Source: Sphyrna mokarran (Eukaryota). Taken from it: DNA of 44,488 nt. The notes below the pieces were generated by a model. The model made no database searches. It had not been told where the DNA came from and saw only the letters and a program-made list of their open reading frames with translations. The stretch lies in the NCBI GenBank assembly GCA_024679065.1, contig JAGIQG010000273.1:1-44488 (forward strand). The letters run 5' to 3'. Shown one piece after another: positions 4,001-38,749 of this stretch. The position numbers were made by a program, and so were the translations under genes. Numbering within the stretch: position 1 is the first letter of the stretch; every line of letters begins with the position of its first letter.

Positions 4001-7000
4001 GAAATCCATGTAGGCCCGGGGAGAATGTGCAAACTTCACAGAGACAGTGACCCAAGCCGAGGATTGAACCCGTGTCCCTCACACTGTGAAGCAGCATTGT
4101 TAACCATTATCTCACTGTGAAGATAATCCCAGCAATTAGTACAATTCCAACTGGGTGCGGGTGGGAGGAAACCTGGAACTGACGGGGGGAGAACTAGATC
4201 CACCGCAAAAATAAATAGAGTCAAACGAAACAAAAATCTGGCAATCAACAATGAAAACTGCTGGAAACCGACAGCAACGTCTGTCTGATATATTGTAACT
4301 GGAACATTAACTCAATCGCTGCACGAACATTTGGAAGAGCCGCAGAGATATGTGTTCTGATTCCAAAGTGTGGGCGAATGTGGTTTCGTTCACAATTAGA
4401 TGCTTCAGACCGTGAGCTGCATGCTGATAGCCGCATGAAGTATCCCGGATGGGACATCCTGCAACTTATTCTAAAATCCAATTTCCTCAATGGTATTAAA
4501 TTATTCGTAAAGCGCTTACCTGAACTGCACAGTCTTGTGTTCCATTTCCATATGTTTGGCGATAGTCACCTGTGTAACGAAGTGGAAGATGTCAATTTAG
4601 GAAAGCAGTTAGGAATACAGAGAACGGATATCAGAAAGTTCTGTCTGGCAAAAGTAGGGAAAATCCTAGCATAATCGATTTGTATATCAAACAGGAAAAG
4701 AATAGGGCCCATTAGGCGCGAAGGCGATAAACTGTGGGTGGAGCCAGAGGACATGGGGCCAGGTGCTAAATGAAAACATCACATCCTTTTCCACCCAAGA
4801 AAATGAGGACTCTGATCCAGAATTCAGGGACTGTGTGGTTCTGGAGCAAATTGACATTGGGTAAGATAAGCTATTGGAGGTGTTGGCAGTCTCAAAATTG
4901 GATATATCTCCAAGTCCAGCTGATTTACGCCCCCAGCAACATTGGAAGGCAAGAGGGGAGATTGCAGAGGCACTGGCTCATATTTTTCAATTCCTCACTG
5001 GCCATGGGAACTCCCAGAAGAACGACAAATATGGTTGGGTTATTTAGGAAAATGTTTTAGAGATGAACCAGGGAACTACAGACAAGTGAGTCTCACATCA
5101 GTGGTAGGAAAACAATGAAAGAAGAATCTGAAGGAGAAAAATCTATCGACACTTGGAGAGACAAAGCTTGTGCAGATATAGTGAGCATGGCTTCGCCAGA
5201 GGGAAGTCATGCCTAACACATCTGATTGAATTTTGTGCGGCTGACCAGGCGTGCAGACGAAGGTAGTGTAGCCGTTGTAGTTTAGATGCATTTCAGCAAA
5301 GCCTTTGACATGGTTCCAAATAGGAGACTTGCAAATATTCAAGGTAATTTGATAAAGTGCATCCAGAATCGGATCAGTTGCTGGAAACAGCAAGTGACGA
5401 CAGGAGGATGCTTAGTACCTGGAAGCCAGTGTCCCTTGGTGTACCACAAGGTTCTGTTTCCTACCCAACCCCCACTTCCCCCCACCACCACCATATTCCG
5501 TCATTTATATAAATGTCACTGGTGTCTATGTGGCGGGTAGAGTTAGTTTACAGAAGTCCAAAGATGTGTAGATTAGGTGGATGGACCGTGCTCATTTATG
5601 CTCACTGCCAGGGGCATTCGCTCTGTAAATGTGCGGCACAACAGGGATAGAGCATGGATGGGATTGGTGTCAAAGCAGGTTTGATGCGCTGACTGGCCTT
5701 CTGCACTGATGAAATATCATAGAACCGTACAGTGCAGAAAGAGGCCCTTCTGCCCATCAAGTCTGCACCGACCATAAACCCACCCAGGCCCCACCCCCAT
5801 ATCCCTACATATTTTACCTACTAATGCTTCTAACCTAAGCTTCTTAAGACACTAATGGGCAATTTTAACATGGCCATTCAACCTAACCCGCATATCTTCG
5901 GACTGTGGGAGGAAACCGGAGCACCTAAAGGAAACCCAAGTAGATACGAGGAGCATGTGTAAACTCCACACAGAAGTGACCCGAGCCGGGGAATCAAACA
6001 CAGGTTTCGAGCTGTGAGGCAGCTGTGTTAAGTACTGTGCCATCGTGTCGCCCACTGCAAAGTCCCTATGATTTATCTGTTCAACGATATTGAATATTTG
6101 CCTTCATTTGGATGTAACTTACCCGTTTGTCTCTCTTTCCGCTGTCCTCTGCGCAATTTTTGTCTCAAGCTAAAACTACTTGAGAAAATAAACAAAATGA
6201 AACAGGTATTATATCCTGCAAAACCTGGCCGGAAATATTTGAGAGAAAGGGTACTTAATTTTAAAACATGGAAAATCTCAGTATGTGCCATAGGAATAAA
6301 TATTGGTTTTGAACTGCGTTTATTATGATATATATAGAGAGATGAACTTTGAAAATGGCTCAATTATTCACCTTTCAATACCGGTTCCCTCTGCTCGCTC
6401 TCCTGAAACAAGACACTGTGATCAGCAATTTAAAACTACAAGGGGAATTACATGAGATGAACAATAATAATGATATCCCTACTTAAAATTATTCCTCACC
6501 TGATCTGCTGCTCTTCCAAATACAAATGGAAAGAAGGACAAAGAGGAGAATCGGGACCAACAGGATAATTATGACAATGGAATGTTCCAGATTGCACCAT
6601 CCTATAGAGAGAAAACTATTTCAAATTGCTGCTGGGTCAAATAAATCGTTCCGCGTTTCTAGGACGGGAAGCTGAACTCAGACACTCTAATTGTTGCCTC
6701 TCGTCATGCTATATTATAACCATAACTGAACAACCAATGGCATTTTTTTCAGATTATCATTGATCAAAACTCAACTGGAATCCCCAGTTAAACAGAGTAG
6801 GTACAAAAGCAGGTCAGAGGCTGGAAATCCTGAGGAAATTTACCAGGATGTTGCCTGGTATGGAGGGCAGGTCTTTTGAAGAGAGGCTGAGGGATTTGAG
6901 GTTGTTTTCGTTAGAAAGGAGGCGGCTAAGAGGGGACCTAATCGAAACATGATGATTAGAGGTTTAGATAGGGTGGACAGTGATAGCCTTTTTCCTAGGA

Positions 7001-31535: not shown

Positions 31536-31916
31536 TAAAAACAGTCAGGAATTAAGACTTTACTGATGACCATGAAACCAATCTCGATCGTAATGAAAAC
31601 TCGTTTTGTTTATTAATGCCCTTTAAGGAAGGAAATCTGGCGTCCTGACCTGGAACGCCTGACATACGGCTCCAAATGCGCAGCTTTGTTTCTCAAATGC
31701 CTGTCAAATTGATTATCAAATGCCTTCCAAGAGTAACGAAGGATAGGCTTAAAATACTGGCTAACTAGCGTCGCTCATGTGCTACAATTCAATAAAAATA
31801 AGAGTTCAAAGTTAGCTTATCAAGTCATTAGCAAATTTCTGTTCCAAAGATGTTGTATTGGAAAGTCTATTATTGAGTACAGAAGTACAAACGTCACTGC
31901 CGTTCCAAATATGCTT

Positions 31917-32122
31917 CATAGAACATAGAACATAGAACATTACAGCACAGAACAGGCCCTTCGGCCTTTGATGTTGTGCCGACCAAAATAAAAAGCAATG
32001 CCCCTCCAACTAAAACATTCCCTTCTCTTCCATATACTTATAATTAACCTCTTAAACGCCCCAAACTTGGCGGCATCTCAACTGCGCAGGCAGGGTCATT
32101 TCCACTCCCTAATCACTCTTTG
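31917..32122 (-). mobile_element. 3' end of a 5'-truncated CR1 family A copy (host of the nested full-length insertion)
   Basis: (CATAGAA)n tail and 3' UTR in reverse; the sequence continues seamlessly at 37681. Confidence 0.9.
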
Positions 32123-33630
32123 ATTGTTCCATTGGAGCAGCACGGAGAGGCAGCGATTTGGGAGAGCGAGAAGTTCGATTGATAAGTAGCTTTTTAACTT
32201 TTCTCTTTGTTTAAAACAGCGAGCGGGAGTAGTTTTTGCCGTTTTTATTTTAAACTAACTTGTAACCGGAAGTCGTCACTAGGAGGCTGCCGGTAGTTGT
32301 AGTTTTTAAGCTATATAAGTACTAACCTCTGGGTATCGGCCTCATTGTTCCATTGGAGCAGCACGGAGAGGCAGCGATTTGGGAGAGCGAGAAGTTCGAT
32401 TGATAAGTAGCTTTTTAACTTTTCTCTTTGTTTAAAACAGCGAGCGGGAGTAGTTTTTGCCGTTTTTATTTTAAACTAACTTGTAACCGGAAGTCGTCAC
32501 TAGGAGGCTGCCGGTAGTTGTAGTTTTTAAGCTATATAAGTACTAACCTCTGGGTATCGGCCTCATTGTTCCATTGGAGCAGCACGGAGAGGCAGCGATT
32601 TGGGAGAGCGAGAAGTTCGATTGATAAGTAGCTTTTTAACTTTTCTCTTTGTTTAAAACAGCGAGCGGGAGTAGTTTTTGCCGTTTTTATTTTAAACTAA
32701 CTTGTAACCGGAAGTCGTCACTAGGAGGCTGCCGGTAGTTGTAGTTTTTAAGCTATATAAGTACTAACCTCTGGGTATCGGCCTCATTGTTCCATTGGAG
32801 CAGCACGGAGAGGCAGCGATTTGGGAGAGCGAGAAGTTCGATTGATAAGTAGCTTTTTAACTTTTCTCTTTGTTTAAAACAGCGAGCGGGAGTAGTTTTT
32901 GCCGTTTTTATTTAAACTAACTTGTAACCGGAAGTCGTCACTAGGAGGCTGCCGGTAGTTGTAGTTTTTAAGCTATATAAGTACTAACCTCTGGGTATCG
33001 GCCTCATTGTTCCATTGGAGCAGCACGGAGAGGCAGCGATTTGGGAGAGCGAGAAGTTCGATTGATAAGTAGCTTTTTAACTTTTCTCTTTGTTTAAAAC
33101 AGCGAGCGGGAGTAGTTTTTGCCGTTTTTATTTAAACTAACTTGTAACCGGAAGTCGTCACTAGGAGGCTGCCGGTAGTTGTAGTTTTTAAGCTATATAA
33201 GTACTAACCTCTGGGTATCGGCCTCATTGTTCCATTGGAGCAGCACGGAGAGGCAGCGATTTGGGAGAGCGAGAAGTTCGATTGATAAGTAGCTTTTTAA
33301 CTTTTCTCTTTGTTTAAAACAGCGAGCGGGAGTAGTTTTTGCCGTTTTTATTTTAAACTAACTTGTAACCGGAAGTCGTCACTAGGAGGCTGCCGGTAGT
33401 TGTAGTTTTTAAGCTATATAAGTACTAACCTCTGGGTATCGGCCTCATTGTTCCATTGGAGCAGCACGGAGAGGCAGCGATTTGGGAGAGCGAGAAGTTC
33501 GATTGATAAGTAGCTTTTTAACTTTTCTCTTTGTTTAAAACAGCGAGCGGGAGTAGTTTTTGCCGTTTTTATTTTAAACTAACTTGTAACCGGAAGTCGT
33601 CACTAGGAGGCTGCCGGTAGTTGTAGTTTT
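32123..33630 (+). repeat. Tandem array of about 6.8 x 220-221-bp monomers forming the CR1 5' UTR/promoter
   Basis: Units start at 32123, 32344, 32565, 32786, 33006, 33226 and 33447; essentially identical apart from one T-run length; each complete unit carries ACCGGAAGT, CGTCA and TATATAAG. Confidence 0.95.
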
Positions 33631-33775
33631 TCTCTCTGACTCTATAAATTCTTACAGAGAGGTAACCCGATACTCTACACAGGTAGAGTATCCCACCCTC
33701 CCCCCTCCTCTAACCTAATAATAATAGTGTGTGTGTAGGTTTTTTTTTTCTCTCCTGCAAATTAAAGTAACAGTG

Positions 33776-34699
33776 ATGGCAGTGCAGGTAGTACATTGCA
33801 CCTCCTGCGGTATGTATGAGGTAAGGGACACCAGTGGTGTTCCTGCTGATTATACCTGCAGGAAGTGTGCACATTTGCAGCTCCTTGAGGATCGTGTTAA
33901 GGAGCTGGAGCTGGAATTAGAGGAGCTCAGAGTAATTCGAGAGGTTGAGGAGGATATAGGCAGGAGTAACAAAGAGATTGTAACTCCTATAAGTGATAAT
34001 TGGGTAACTATTAGGAGGAGGGGTAAGAAGCAATCGGGGAGACAATCCCCTGGGGCTGTTCCCCTCCAAAATAAATTTTCTGTCTTGGAGGCTACAGTTG
34101 AGGAAGAATCAACTGGAGCTGACCAAAGGGAGCAGGTCTCTGGGGGTGAGACTGCTGAGAATGCTCAGGTGGGTGGGGGGAATAAGAGATTAGGCCTAGT
34201 TATAGGAGACTCCATAGTTAGAGGGACAGATAGGAGGGTAAATAGTAATAAACAGGACTCAGGGCTGGTGTGTTGCCTCCCAGGGGCTGGGGTCCAGGAT
34301 GTTGCAGATCGGGTTTTTAGGATTCTTAAGGGTGAGGGGAGTCAGCCCCAAGTCATTGTTCATGTGGGGACACATGATGTAGGTAGGACAAGGGAAGGGG
34401 ATATTAAACAGAAATTTATGGAGTTAGGGTGGAAGCTTAGGTCCATAACAGGCAGAGTGGTTATCTCTGGACTCTTGCCTGTGCCAAGGGATAGTTTAGA
34501 GATGAACAGAGAAAGGGATAGTTTGAACTCATGGCTGCGTGGATGGTGCAGGAGGGAGGGGTTCAGGTTCCTTAACAATTGGGACTCATTCTGGGATAGG
34601 TGGGACCTCTTCAAGAGAGATGGTCTACACCTGAACCAGAGGGGGACTAATATCTTGGGGGGAAAATTTGCTAAGGCTATGATGGGGGCTTTAAACTGA
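33776..34699 (+). CDS. CR1 ORF1p: zinc finger, coiled coil and SGNH/GDSL esterase-like domain
   Basis: ATG at 33776; CTSC..CRKC; LLEDRVKELELELEELR; blocks IGDS, LPGA, HVGTHD, DGLHLN; open to TGA at 34699. Confidence 0.92.
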   Translation: MAVQVVHCTSCGMYEVRDTSGVPADYTCRKCAHLQLLEDRVKELELELEELRVIREVEEDIGRSNKEIVTPISDNWVTIRRRGKKQSGRQSPGAVPLQNKFSVLEATVEEESTGADQREQVSGGETAENAQVGGGNKRLGLVIGDSIVRGTDRRVNSNKQDSGLVCCLPGAGVQDVADRVFRILKGEGSQPQVIVHVGTHDVGRTREGDIKQKFMELGWKLRSITGRVVISGLLPVPRDSLEMNRERDSLNSWLRGWCRREGFRFLNNWDSFWDRWDLFKRDGLHLNQRGTNILGGKFAKAMMGALN

Positions 34700-37582
34700 T
34701 TCGGGGGGGGGGTGGGATCCTAAGTAGTTGGGGTGCTGAGAGGGATGAGAGTAAGGGGGTTATAGAAGAGAGTTGTAAAACACAGCGGCGTACGGGTGGG
34801 GTGGGGCATGGTTTGAAATGCGTATACTTTAATGCAAGGAGTATTCGCAATAAGGGGGAGGAACTTGCAGCTTGGACCAGTACCTGGAACTTCGATGTTG
34901 TGGCCATTTCAGAGACTTGGGTAGAGCAGGGACAGGAATGGATGTTGCAGGTTCCGGGGTACAAATGCTTTAGTCGGAGTAGAGAAGGAGGTAGAAGGGG
35001 GGGAGGAGTGGCGTTATTGGTCAAAGACTGTATCACGGTGATAGAAAAGAAGTTTGATGAGGACTTGTCTGTTGAGGTAGTATGGGCTGAGATTAGAAAC
35101 AGGAGAGGAGAGGTCACCCTGTTGGGAGTCTTTTACAGACCTCCTAATAGTTCTAGAGAGGTTGAGGAAAGGATTGCGAAGTCAATTCTGATTAGGAGTG
35201 AAAGTAGTAGGGTAATTGTGATGGGGGACTTTAACTTTGCTAATATTGATTGGAATAGCTATAGCTCTAGCTCGTTAGAGGGGTCAGTTTTCGTACAGAG
35301 TGTGCAGGAAGGTTTTTTGACTCAGTATGTAGATAGGCCAACTAGAGGTGAGGCTACATTGGATTTGGTGCTGGGCAATGAGCCAGACCAGGTGTTAGGC
35401 TTGGAAGTTAGTGAACATTTTGGTGATAGTGACCACAATTCGGTTACGTTCACCTTAGTGATGGACAGGGATAGGCATGAAGCTGGGGGCTGTAGTTATA
35501 GCTGGGGGAAGGGTAATTATGAGGCCATCAGGAGAGAATTAGGGTGCGTAGATTGGACTAGGGAACTACAGGGACTGGGAACATCTGGAATGTGGTGCTT
35601 ATTCAAGGAGCAGCTGCTGAGAGTCCTTGATAAGTATGTCCCTGTCAGGCAGGGAGGAAATGGTACGAGTAAGAGAGCCTTGGTGTACGAAAAGAGTTGA
35701 TTTGCTGGTTAAGAAGAAAAAGGAGGCTTATGTCAGGATGAGGCTTGAAGGCTCAGGTAGTGCAATGGATAGCTATAGATTAGCTAGGAAGGAGGTAAAA
35801 AGTGAATTGAGGAGAGCTAAGAGGGGACACGAGAAGATGTTGGCTGATAGGATTAAGGAGAATCCTAAAGCTTTCTTTCGATATGTTAAGAATAGAAGAT
35901 TGGTTAGGGCAAGATTAGGGCCAGTCATAGATAGCAGTGGGAAGTTGTGCGTGGAGCCTGAAGAGATTGGCGAGGCACTGAATAAATATTTCTCTTCGGT
36001 ATTCACGCAGAGTGCTGGAAATGTAGCTGTGGAGAGCACTGAGGTACAGGGTTGCAAATTGGGGAGTATTGTAGTAGATAGGGAGGATGTGTTAGAAATT
36101 CTCGAGGGTTTGAAGTTGGATAAGTCCCCTGGGCCGGACGGGATTTACCCTAGGATTCTCTGGGAGGCAAGAGAGGAGATTGCAGAGCCTCTGGCTCTGA
36201 TCTTCAGGTCCTCGTTGGTTACGGGTGTGGTTCCGGAGGACTGGAGGATGGCGAATGTGGTCCCATTGTTTAAGAAGGGGAAGAGAGACCTTCCTGGGAA
36301 TTATAGGCCAGTGAGTCTTACTTCTGTTGTGGGCAAGGTATTGGAGAGAATTATTAGGGATAGGATTTATAGTTATTTAGAGAGAAATGAATTGATTGGG
36401 GATAGTCAGCATGGTTTCGTGAAGGGTAGGTCATGCCTTACTAACCTCATTGAGTTTTTTGAGAAAGTGACCAGAGAGGTGGATGGGGGTAAGGCGGTTG
36501 ATGTAGTATATATGGACTTTAGTAAGGCTTTTGATAAGGTGGCCCATGGAAGACTTCTACAGAAAATGCAGATGTGTGGAATAGAGGGTGATTTAGCTAA
36601 TTGGATTAGAAATTGGCTGGCAGATAGAAGACAGAGGGTGGTGGTTGATGGGAGATATTCATCGTGGAGTTCGGTGACGAGTGGTGTGCCTCAGGGGTCT
36701 GTTTTGGGGCCCCTGCTGTTTGTAATTTTTATAAATGATCTGGATGAGGGTATTGAGGGATGGATCAGTAAATTTGCAGATGATACTAAAGTTGGTGGAG
36801 TGGTAGATAGTGAAGAGGGGTGTTTTAGTTTACAGAGTGACTTGGACAAGTTGCAGAGCTGGGCCGAGAGGTGGCAAATGGAGTTTAATGTGGAAAAGTG
36901 TGAGGTAATGCACTTTGGCAGGAACAATAAATGTGTAGAGTATAGGGCTAATGGTAGGGCTCTTAATAGTGTTGAGGAACAGAAGGATCTTGGTGTATGT
37001 GTCAATAGATCCCTGAAAGTAGGCAGTCAAGTGGATAAAGTTGTTAAGAAGGCATATGGAGTCTTAGCTTTTATTGGTAGGGGGATTGAATTTAGGAGCC
37101 GCAGCATCATGTTGCAACTGTACAAAACTCTAGTGCGGCCGCACTTGGAGTATTGTGTGCAGTTCTGGTGCCCACATTATAAGAAAGATGTGGAGGCATT
37201 GGAGAGGGTACAGAGGAGGTTTACCAGGATGTTGCCTGGTATGGAGGGCAGGTCTTATGAAGAGAGGTTGAAGGATTTGAGGTTGTTTTCGTTAGAAAGG
37301 AGGCGGCTAAGAGGGGATCTTATTGAAACATATAAGATGATTAGAGGTTTAGATAGGGTGGACAGTGATAGCCTTTTTCCTAGGATGGAGAAAGCTAGCA
37401 CGAGGGGACACAGCTTTAAATTAAGGGGTATGAGTTATAGGACGGATATCAGAGGTAGGTTCTTTACTCAAAGAGTGATTAGGGAGTGGAATGCCCTGCC
37501 TGCAGCTGTTGTAGATGCGCCAAGTTTGGTGGCGTTTAAGAGGTTAGTTGATAAGTATATGGATAGGAAGGGAATGGTTTAG
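34690..37582 (+). CDS. CR1 ORF2p: APE endonuclease + reverse transcriptase (one +1 frameshift near 35665)
   Basis: EN motifs NARS, ISETW, GGGV, GDFN, LDLV, SDH (ORF 34801-35700); RT motifs [34 protein letters not shown] (ORF 35627-37582); removing 1 nt near 35665 fuses the two ORFs. Confidence 0.92.
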
Positions 37583-37680
37583 TTAGGAGGGGCATTGCTT
37601 TTTATTTTGGTCGGCACAACATCGAAGGCCGAAGGGCCTGTTCTGTGCTGTATTGTTCTATGTTTCTATGTTCTATGTTC

Positions 37681-38137
37681 TTTGAGTAAAGAACCTACCT
37701 CTGATATCCGTCCTATAACTCATACCCCTTAATTTAAAGCTGTGTCCCCTCGTGCTAGCTTTCTCCATCCTAGGAAAAAGGCTATCACTGTCCACCCTAT
37801 CTAAACCTCTAATCATCTTATATGCTTCAATAAGATCCCCTCTTAGCCGCCTCCTTTCTAACGAAAACAACCTCAAATCCTTCAACCTCTCTTCATAGGA
37901 CCTGCCCTCCATACCAGGCAACCTCCTGGTAAACCTCCTCTGTACCCTCTCCAATGCCTCCACATCTTTCTTATAATGTGGCGACCAGAACTGCACACAA
38001 TACTCCAAGTGCGGCCGCACTAGAGTTTTGTAAAGCTGCAACATGATGCTGCGGCTCCTAAATTCAATCCCCCTACCAATAAAAGCTAAGACTCCATATG
38101 CCTTCTTAACAACTTTATCCACTTGACTGCCTACTTT
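37681..38137 (-). mobile_element. Remainder of the host CR1 family A copy (RT C-terminal region)
   Basis: ORF 37673-38122 nearly identical to the ORF2 C-terminus. Confidence 0.92.
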
Positions 38138-38749
38138 TCAATTACTATAAAGAACCATGAAACATCCTGTGGGCGGGATTGTTTCTATCTGAAGCAGGAC
38201 GCTTACCATCTTACGGAAACAATGACAAATATGCCCAGTTGAAGACCATACAAAGAAAAGAGGCAGTGCTAACTGCTTGCATGTTAGCCCTTCAATGCTT
38301 TTGATCAGCACAACTTTCAATGCATATTTTTTGTTACACAATTGTATAAAATGTAGAGCGCAAATTGGGATCATTCGGCCCATCTGCTCTGTGCTGTTTT
38401 TATTGTCCACCTTTGCCTCATCGTATTTCCTCATCATATCACCTCATCAACTATTCTTCTATTCATTTCTCTCTGCTCCCTCTCTCCAACTCATTCATTA
38501 CATTCCCTTCTGCTATTCATCTCAAATATTTCCTGTCATAGTGTGTTCTACACACTTCCACTTTTTGTTCACTTTGGTTTGCCGGGTTAAAAAAAAAGGT
38601 AAAGTCTACGAACAGGTAAGAAGCGACTCGAGAATAGCTCTTTCTCTGCCGCCATCGGACTTTTGAATGGCCGGACCTTATATTTGTATGATCTTTCTCA
38701 GCAACCTAATTGTGACTGTGGCGTTATGATCTGCACCCTCCCCTTTCAA

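What the first reader, a model, noticed from the sequence alone, without database searches (positions are those of the whole stretch)
32123..33630. CR1 LINE with a tandem 'sacrificial' TATA-promoter array
Seen: about 6.8 nearly identical 220-221-bp monomers. Each complete unit ends with ACCGGAAGT (ETS/GABP, e.g. 32265), CGTCA and TATATAAG (32312). An Inr-like CTCATT follows, whose A (32344) lies 32 nt after the TATA start and is the first base of the next unit. The element's own 5' end (after the TSD) falls at that same A (32123, +/-1 because of microhomology), so the copied RNA apparently began at a monomer boundary, driven by an upstream monomer that was not copied. Knowledge: LINEs normally use internal promoters; monomer arrays are known in rodent L1 and Dictyostelium TRE5-A, and Drosophila HeT-A uses an upstream neighbour's promoter. 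Inference: this shark CR1 uses an external TATA promoter, loses at least one monomer per cycle and must regenerate units (template switching or unequal exchange). I do not know this strategy to be described for CR1.
Basis: partly seen in the sequence, partly recalled or inferred. Interest (0 to 1): 0.85.

Follow-up and report, generated by a model that had tools for sequence, protein, structure and literature searches.

The report
CR1 LINE with TATA-box promoter monomers
A young CR1-type jumping gene of a shark or ray carries almost seven identical 221-base promoter-like units at its front, much as mouse L1 elements do, and it begins exactly where one such unit would be expected to start transcription.

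Summary
Window 32123-33631 holds six complete units (221, 221, 221, 220, 220, 221 bp) and one 185-bp partial unit. They differ only in one T-run length. Each complete unit carries ACCGGAAGT, CGTCA and TATATAAG, and the A of CTCATT lies 32 nt after the TATA's first T. The array, a 144-bp non-repeated tether, an esterase-type ORF1, an APE+RT ORF2 and an (ATGTTCT)n tail were inserted as one piece into an older CR1 copy. The target duplication is 3-7 bp, and the 5' end is at 32123 or 32124, the predicted start site. In support, the units are CpG-rich (obs/exp 1.15 against 0.13-0.39 in the ORFs). The 1653-nt leader has no sense-strand ATG. The unit is multi-copy in independent runs. Not tested: transcription start sites, 5' ends and unit counts of other copies, and the array length in long reads. 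The "sacrificial" logic is what is already described for mouse L1 monomers (PMC6454616). 5' repeat subunits in CR1-group elements were noted in 2026 (PMC13343379). The verdict is a new variant of a known kind. The scan noted the same kind of array four times on other pieces of this genome. These may be the same or a duplicated locus, and I could not check them.

The parts
31917..32122 (-). 3' part of an older CR1 copy (target of the insertion), upstream half
   Evidence: 92.5% match to element positions 5346-5555 in reverse; alignment
32117..32123 (+). left copy of the target-site duplication, TCTTTG(A); 3 to 7 bp because of overlap with the tail unit and the element's first A
   Evidence: alignment, read
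32123..33631 (+). array of 6 complete units (starts 32123, 32344, 32565, 32786, 33006, 33226) and one 185-bp partial unit (33447-33631)
32265..32278 (+). ACCGGAAGT (ETS-like) and CGTCA (CRE half-site-like), 79 and 70 nt before the next unit's start; repeated in all 7 units
   Evidence: the factor names are recalled, not tested
32312..32319 (+). TATATAAG, first of six (also 32533, 32754, 32974, 33194, 33415); fits TATAWAWR
32341..32346 (+). CTCATT initiator-like joint between units; the A at 32344 is the first base of unit 2, 32 nt after the T of the TATA; also at the five other joints
33632..33775 (+). non-repeated tether with a TATAAA at 33643 that has no matching initiator 28-34 nt downstream; no significant likeness to the unit's last 36 bp
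33776..34699 (+). ORF1, 307 aa: Cys-rich N-terminus, coiled-coil-like stretch, GDSL/SGNH esterase domain
   Evidence: (PF13472, E 1.3e-09)
34801..37582 (+). ORF2: APE endonuclease (34801-35700) and reverse transcriptase (35627-37582), with one change of frame near 35660-35700
   Evidence: (PF03372 E 1.6e-20; PF00078 E 2.3e-37)
37583..37681 (+). 3' UTR with a predicted hairpin (not better than shuffles, z -0.9) and an (ATGTTCT)n-like tail
37679..37685 (+). right copy of the target-site duplication, TCTTTGA at most
37679..38137 (-). older CR1 copy, downstream half of the target
   Evidence: 98.5% match to element positions 4894-5352 in reverse

Best explanation
This is a young, nearly intact CR1-type LINE. 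Its 5' UTR is an array of promoter monomers followed by a short tether, the same layout as mouse L1. The last 80 nt or so of each unit look like a classical RNA polymerase II promoter: ETS-like and CRE-like sites, then TATATAAG, then CTCATT 32 nt further on. That promoter would start transcription at the first base of the next unit. RNAs would therefore begin at unit starts inside the array. They would carry the remaining units as an ATG-free leader and be copied into new sites with a whole number of units plus the 0.8 partial unit. This copy begins at such a start, so its parent RNA most likely came from an element with at least one further unit upstream. Shown here: the anatomy, the single insertion event and the position of the 5' end. 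Inferred: the promoter activity, the start sites and the loss of units per cycle. Arrays would be kept long by unit duplication, through unequal exchange or template switching of the reverse transcriptase. This last step is inferred by analogy with mouse L1.
For: Array and motifs. One target duplication around array plus body, and a 5' end at 32123/32124 on the A of the initiator-like joint. Only the unit TATA has a matching CTCATT at 32 nt; the tether's TATAAA has none. CpG obs/exp is 1.15 in the units, against 0.19 in the tether, 0.13 in ORF1, 0.39 in ORF2 and 0.53 in the window. That is expected of a promoter kept unmethylated in the germline or of constrained binding sites. There are 0 ATG on the sense strand in 1653 nt from the 5' end to the ORF1 start, against 13 on the other strand. 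The unit is multi-copy in contigs of three runs from two coded organisms. A 96-nt exact contig of a second sample of organism A covers 32278-32373 (66 nt before and 30 nt after a joint). A bridging contig of X1 covers 33396-33486. Mouse L1 shows that this logic works in another LINE clade (PMC6454616 and PMC9022269, passages read).
Against: No start site was seen. laid contigs only, X2 is only guessed to be RNA, and the raw-read run X21 laid nothing. Only one copy could be read. The table of loose ends was filled by the highly repeated flank, so 5' ends of other copies were not seen. One X1 contig (1099 nt, depth 16.6) matches only from 32281 on, with 6 differences. That may be a copy starting inside a unit. 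The ATG-free leader is weak by a first-order Markov control (P 0.086). The 3-7 bp target duplication leaves the 5' end uncertain by one base. The copy's ORF2 has a frame break, so this copy as assembled is not itself a working source.
Confidence: 0.6

Rival explanations
1. Internal promoter with joints made by the reverse transcriptase. Transcription starts at the element's very first base whatever lies upstream, positioned by sequences downstream of the start. The units arose when the reverse transcriptase reached the RNA's 5' end and jumped back into the leader. Unit joints would then coincide with the RNA 5' end by construction, and the TATA spacing would be secondary or later selected. No unit need be lost per cycle.
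For: LINEs as a rule use internal promoters (established knowledge). The unit starts with TTCCATTGG at +6 to +14, which holds a CCAT core and an inverted CCAAT (my reading; the factor sites are recalled). Stepwise 5' extension during cDNA synthesis is one of two models for mouse L1 (PMC6454616, discussion passage). The four other scan notes give arrays of 1508-1516 letters, the same length as here. If those are independent copies, that argues for one fixed start at the array's first base.
Against: It leaves the fit of TATAWAWR at 32 nt plus CTCATT to chance or later selection; about 0.001 expected for a TATA in a 7-nt window. The four notes are unchecked and may be the same or a duplicated locus, since a VJ-C1 gene note recurs with them.
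Confidence: 0.2
2. Local expansion or assembly effect. The element arrived with one or two units, and the rest arose at this locus by unequal exchange or replication slippage, or the assembler misjudged the number. The long array says little about the RNA.
For: The units are identical but for one T-run, as after very recent local duplication. In X1 the summed depth of all units (about 126-139 thousand per unit position) is no higher than that of the tether (118-243 thousand) (table 2). On average, then, a tether-bearing copy has about one unit or fewer of this type, and 6.8 is unusually long. No contig spans the array.
Against: It does not touch the 5'-end coincidence, the motifs, the CpG excess or the ATG-free leader. 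Unit-to-unit joints are seen in contigs of two samples. The depths are sums over contigs at 90% likeness or more, and the tool itself says they are no copy numbers.
Confidence: 0.12
3. Random 5' truncation of a longer array, or a satellite that merely abuts a truncated CR1.
For: All of the roughly 12 other CR1 pieces in the window are 5'-truncated; none reaches element position below 3898.
Against: One target duplication encloses array and body, and the flanks are two halves of one older copy, so the array was part of the inserted unit. A random end would fall on the initiator A about 1% of the time.
Confidence: 0.03

Closest known systems
Mouse (and rat) L1 5' UTR monomer arrays (A, Tf, Gf types) with tether
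   Same: Tandem units of about 200 bp at the 5' end, CpG-rich, followed by a non-repeated tether and ORF1. A fractional unit number: recent Tf insertions with 5.7 and 7.5 monomers are cited in PMC9022269. The 5' unit's truncation site is taken as the parent's start site, and monomer duplication maintains the promoter (PMC6454616). Parallel initiation from several monomers is proposed (PMC9022269).
   Different: A different LINE clade: esterase ORF1 and a microsatellite tail, not L1 ORF1p and poly(A). No sequence likeness was sought or expected. Here the core promoter is a TATA box plus initiator lying wholly upstream of the start. Mouse units rely on a YY1 site near the start (PMC6454616 passages; PMC11602158, listing only). 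Here the 5' end is a whole-unit boundary.
Repeating 5' subunits of vertebrate CR1-group elements (PMC13343379, Fig. 4 legend, section 15 read)
   Same: CR1-group LINEs with 100-500-bp subunits repeated near the 5' UTR, species-specific in sequence.
   Different: Reported there for 'some ORF1(-) elements' with 1 to 5 subunits. No promoter motifs, start sites or 5'-end phase are discussed: 0 occurrences of 'promoter', 'monomer', 'tandem' or 'TATA' in that text. Here the element has an esterase ORF1 and 6.8 units.
Drosophila HeT-A 'promoting in tandem' (recalled; seen only as a cited phrase in the listing)
   Same: A promoter that lies upstream of the start and is not part of the RNA it drives, so that a copy depends on an upstream neighbour unit.
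   Different: The HeT-A promoter sits in the 3' end of a whole upstream element in telomeric head-to-tail arrays. Here the units are a 5' UTR array inside one dispersed element.
Dictyostelium TRE5-A A-module (recalled, no call)
   Same: A repeated 5' module with promoter function in a non-LTR element.
   Different: An unrelated clade and a tRNA-gene-targeted element; not examined here.

Membership tests
CR1-group LINE (CR1/L2 and kin) | ORF2 with apurinic-type endonuclease followed by reverse transcriptase | tested here: met
   PF03372 E 1.6e-20 and PF00078 E 2.3e-37; one frame break between them
CR1-group LINE (CR1/L2 and kin) | ORF1, when present, of the esterase (SGNH/GDSL) type (PMC13343379 section 15) | tested here: met
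   PF13472 E 1.3e-09, above its cut-off. 67 relatives found, and the named ones at 46% identity or more are from sharks, rays and skates
CR1-group LINE (CR1/L2 and kin) | no poly(A); short microsatellite tail after a 3' UTR hairpin | tested here: inconclusive
   The tail (ATGTTCT)n is read. A hairpin is predicted but folds no better than shuffles (z -0.9)
Canonical CR1 as against L2 or other CR1-group clades | placement of the reverse transcriptase in the CR1 clade of a tree | not tested
   No reference set of named clades was at hand, so I use 'CR1-type' in the wide sense
Monomeric LINE promoter (mouse L1 kind), as a way of working | tandem 5' units, then a non-repeated tether, then ORF1 | tested here: met
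Monomeric LINE promoter (mouse L1 kind), as a way of working | units enriched in CpG relative to the body | tested here: met
   obs/exp 1.15 against 0.13-0.39
Monomeric LINE promoter (mouse L1 kind), as a way of working | unit number varies between copies and 5' ends cluster at one site of the unit | tested here: inconclusive
   One copy was read. Depth ratios hint at about one unit per copy on average. There were 0 hits in three collections
Monomeric LINE promoter (mouse L1 kind), as a way of working | units have promoter activity and transcription starts inside the array | not testable with these tools
   It needs CAGE, 5'-RACE or reporter assays; one search gave contigs only
L1 clade | L1-type ORF1p and poly(A) tail | tested here: not met
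   Esterase ORF1 and a microsatellite tail. It works like mouse L1 but is not an L1
Focused TATA/initiator core promoter | TATAWAWR with its first T about 30-32 nt before an initiator A (consensus and spacing recalled) | tested here: met
   TATATAAG at 32312 and the A of CTCATT at 32344, in 6 of 6 complete units. The start site itself was not tested
HeT-A-type promoting in tandem | promoter in the 3' end of an upstream whole element | tested here: not met
   The TATA units lie in the 5' UTR of a single element inserted in an older CR1 fragment of opposite strand

The most novel reading that the evidence does not exclude
This CR1 lineage relies on a classical TATA/initiator promoter that lies entirely upstream of each start. 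Every round of retrotransposition would then shed at least the 5'-most unit, and the family survives only because arrays are rebuilt, for instance by the reverse transcriptase switching template at the RNA's 5' end. That would be an LTR-like answer to the promoter problem, evolved independently in a CR1 of cartilaginous fishes. It would be directly testable, because starts, unit counts and joints are all phase-defined.
Probability: 0.3. Interest if true: 0.65.

Novelty: new variant of a known kind. Interest (0 to 1): 0.5.

Why it matters
How a LINE keeps a promoter when it copies only what it transcribes is a classic problem. Mouse L1 monomers are the one well-studied tandem-unit answer, and their start sites and regeneration are blurred by TATA-less, dispersed initiation. 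A CR1 family with a sharp TATA-to-initiator geometry and a whole-unit 5' end would be an independent, cleaner case. It predicts exact start sites, whole-number unit counts and a measurable loss and regain of units. It would also show that monomeric promoters arose by convergence in the LINE group that dominates shark and ray genomes (22-34% of the genome according to PMC13343379, passage).

Tried and rejected
Exact-pattern scans for a 20-nt piece of the unit found 0 stretches in metagenome contigs, genome contigs and viral contigs. The search for related loci with an ORF1 alignment gave 29 loci in metagenome contigs at 26-48% identity, 1 in genome contigs (34%) and 0 in viral contigs. TRF on the 29 metagenome loci found no 5' array before an ORF1 match; there were 2 rows, both in L009, with periods 93 and 44 and 2 copies each. 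So nothing can be said about relatives.

Reads. Read laying was given 31800-34800. The older CR1 tail in the left flank is so abundant that it filled the table of loose ends (649 rows not shown), so 5' ends of other copies were not seen. The raw-read run X21 laid 0 reads. I considered reading contig ends as signs of branch points at unit starts: an X2 contig ends at unit position 30. I rejected this, because a variant at unit position 31 would explain that end and the start of the next contig at position 32 equally well.

Origin of the unit. The unit's last 36 bp plus the next unit's start show no significant likeness to the tether (local score 14; 226 of 500 shuffles reach it). Rfam found nothing in 31800-38200 at E up to 1.

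Earlier notes. The four other 'monomer' notes of the scan have nearly the same length as this array. I did not count them as independent copies, because a VJ-C1 gene note like the one on this window recurs on another piece too. The search by sequence was blank.

Literature. Searches found no paper describing TATA-box monomers or start-site phasing in a CR1. This holds only for the held library; supplements were closed.

Full report
What is there. Tandem Repeats Finder reports one array at 32123-33631 with period 221, 6.8 copies, 99% matches and no indels. Reading the sequence and cutting it at each ATTGTTCCATTGG... start gives units of 221, 221, 221, 220, 220 and 221 bp and a last unit of 185 bp. 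The units are identical except that units 4 and 5 have TTT where the others have TTTT. ACCGGAAGT and CGTCA occur in all seven units, and TATATAAG and the joint CTCATT in the six complete ones. ACCGGAAGT occurs 7 times in the window, all in the array, against 0.14 expected. TATAWAWR occurs 39 times in the window against 14.3 expected, six of them in the array. The A of CTCATT is the first base of the next unit and lies 32 nt after the first T of the TATA box (32312 to 32344).

What it belongs to. Downstream of the array lie several parts in turn:
- A 144-bp non-repeated stretch (33632-33775).
- An ORF of 307 aa from the ATG at 33776, with a GDSL/SGNH esterase domain (PF13472, E 1.3e-09).
- An endonuclease ORF (PF03372).
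- A reverse transcriptase ORF (PF00078).
- A short 3' UTR that ends in ATGTTCT-like repeats.
The two parts of ORF2 are in different frames, with one break near 35660-35700. ORF1 has 67 relatives at E 0.001 or better. The closest reaches 77% identity over 73% of the query, or 74% over its full length. The named hits at 46% identity or more come from sharks, rays and skates, with Mustelus asterias the best named at 64%. This supports an elasmobranch host but does not name it. Esterase ORF1s are the ORF1 type of CR1 and L2 lineages according to PMC13343379 (section 15, read). I did not build a reverse-transcriptase tree, so 'CR1-type' is meant in the wide sense.

One insertion event. The 206 bp before the array and the sequence after the tail are two halves of one older CR1 copy on the minus strand. 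Aligned to other copies, the two halves overlap by at most TCTTTGA (32117-32123 and 37679-37685). The first three letters of that overlap could equally be the end of the tail repeat, and the last A could be the element's first base. So the target duplication is 3 to 7 bp, and the element starts at 32123 or 32124. The array and the body were therefore inserted together. The array is not a satellite that happens to lie next to a truncated CR1.

Further features that bear on function. CpG observed/expected is 1.15 in the unit (11 CpG in 221 bp at 42.5% G+C). It is 0.19 in the tether, 0.13 in ORF1, 0.39 in ORF2 and 0.53 in the whole window. All parts of the copy have the same age at this locus, so the contrast reflects the history of the source lineage. 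It fits units that stay unmethylated in the germline, or whose CpG-bearing sites are constrained, as for mouse L1 monomers. The sense strand has no ATG in the 1653 nt from the 5' end to the ORF1 start, while the other strand has 13. The chance of none in one unit plus the tether is 0.0004 by mononucleotide shuffling but 0.086 under a first-order Markov model, so this is suggestive only. It fits a leader meant to be scanned by ribosomes, that is, units that are part of the mRNA. The tether has its own TATAAA (33643), but I found no initiator-like match 28-34 nt after it (reading). The tether shows no significant likeness to the end of the unit. Rfam finds nothing in 31800-38200.

Evidence from public runs. 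I laid X1 (DNA, organism A, possibly the source of the assembly), X2 (the same organism from another sample and study, only guessed to be RNA), X3 (organism B) and X21 (raw DNA reads of organism J) on 31800-34800.
- X21 laid nothing.
- X1, X2 and X3 are contigs, which cannot show starts or ends of molecules.
- They do show that the unit is multi-copy. Summed over the array, the word depth in X1 is about 126-139 thousand per unit position, against 13.7 for the one contig of unique flank.
- Unit-to-unit joints exist outside this assembly. An exact 96-nt contig of X2 covers 32278-32373, with 66 nt before and 30 nt after a joint. A 116-nt contig of X1 aligns over 33396-33486 with 7 differences and bridges a joint.
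- The unit is also present in organism B.
- Against a simple picture, the tether's depth in X1 (118-243 thousand) is as high as that of all units together. The average tether-bearing copy would then have about one unit or fewer of this type (at 90% likeness), and 6.8 units is long. The tool warns that these depths are not copy numbers.
- One 1099-nt X1 contig of near-single-copy depth matches only from 32281 onward. That may be a copy starting inside a unit.
- The table of loose ends, which could have shown the 5' ends of other copies, was filled by the enormously repeated CR1 tail in the left flank. That was a consequence of my choice of stretch, and the call cannot be repeated.

Other copies. 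Exact-pattern scans found nothing. Protein-guided scans found only distant kin without 5' arrays. All other CR1 pieces in the window are 5'-truncated. The scan's notebook holds four notes on 'another piece' of this genome that describe the same kind of array, with 1508, 1516, 1509 and 1509 letters. If these were independent insertions, their equal length would speak against variable unit counts and for one dominant start. However, a note on a VJ-C1 receptor gene like the one on this window also recurs on another piece. These pieces may therefore be the same or a duplicated locus. I treat them as unchecked leads.

How it most likely works. Each unit's 3' end is a focused TATA/initiator promoter aimed at the first base of the next unit. 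Transcripts start at unit starts and carry the downstream units as leader. New copies therefore begin at ATTGTTCC with a whole number of units plus the 0.8 partial unit. This copy's 5' end on the initiator A is what that model predicts, and it would be about a 1% coincidence otherwise. I give this 0.6.

The main rival (0.2) is an internal promoter that starts at the element's first base. In that case the unit joints were created by template switching at the RNA's 5' end, so joint and 5' end coincide by construction and no unit is lost per cycle. Local expansion or an assembly effect (0.12) would explain the number of units but none of the other features. Random truncation, or a satellite that merely abuts the element, is unlikely (0.03).

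Comparison with what is known. The layout and the logic are those of mouse L1: monomers plus tether, fractional unit numbers, and recent insertions with 5.7 and 7.5 monomers (PMC9022269, passages). For mouse L1 the 5' unit's truncation site is read as the parent's start site. Monomer duplication is said to maintain the promoter 'during truncation-prone retrotranspositions', with second-strand priming or unequal crossing-over as the proposed mechanisms (PMC6454616, passages). PMC5381506 (passages) records tandem duplications in the 5' UTRs of several mammalian L1s and none in lizard L1s. For the CR1 group, the Fig. 4 legend of PMC13343379 mentions 1-5 repeating subunits of 100-500 bp near the 5' UTR of some ORF1-less elements. 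What is new here is the combination of four features:
- a CR1-type element with an ORF1;
- a longer array than the 1-5 subunits reported there;
- a canonical TATA box and initiator wholly upstream of the start;
- a 5' end on the predicted start.
The consensus sequences and spacing rules for the TATA box and initiator, the factor names for ACCGGAAGT and CGTCA, and the HeT-A and TRE5-A comparisons are recalled, not taken from a call.

Verdict. The mechanism is a variant of one already known from mouse L1. Interest is 0.5.

Noticed in passing
window 35627-35700: ORF2 changes frame once between the endonuclease and reverse transcriptase parts, so this copy as assembled cannot make a full ORF2 protein. 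It could be a real mutation or a sequencing error.
   Followed up: partly
window 32123-33775: No ATG on the sense strand in the whole 1653-nt leader, against 13 on the other strand.
   Followed up: yes
window 32123-37582: Sharp CpG contrast inside one element: obs/exp 1.15 in the units, 0.19 in the tether, 0.13 in ORF1 and 0.39 in ORF2.
   Followed up: yes
window 33651-33663: Just after the tether's TATAAA, this copy differs from nearly all family contigs of runs X1-X3 at 33651, 33652, 33654 and 33663 (table 3). It is a minority variant or carries a small private change.
   Followed up: no
window 31917-32122 and 37679-38137: The element sits inside an older CR1 copy of the opposite strand. The window holds about a dozen further CR1 pieces, all 5'-truncated, at 71-98% identity to this element.
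   Followed up: partly
window 31901-32001: The CR1 3' tail region has a summed contig depth of about 7.7 million in X1, against 13.7 for a unique flank contig. This points to an enormous number of CR1 tails in the genome, and it swamps read-laying near them.
   Followed up: no
window 34672-34945: Another note of the scan (s1-887764) proposes a -1 frameshift site at the ORF1/ORF2 junction. In one search the ORF2 frame is open from about 34650, and ORF1 ends at 34699 in another frame. I did not examine it.
   Followed up: no
scan notebook, other pieces of this genome: Notes on a monomer array of about 1509 letters and on a VJ-C1 receptor gene recur together on other pieces. This suggests that this locus is present more than once in the assembly or was read more than once.
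   Followed up: no
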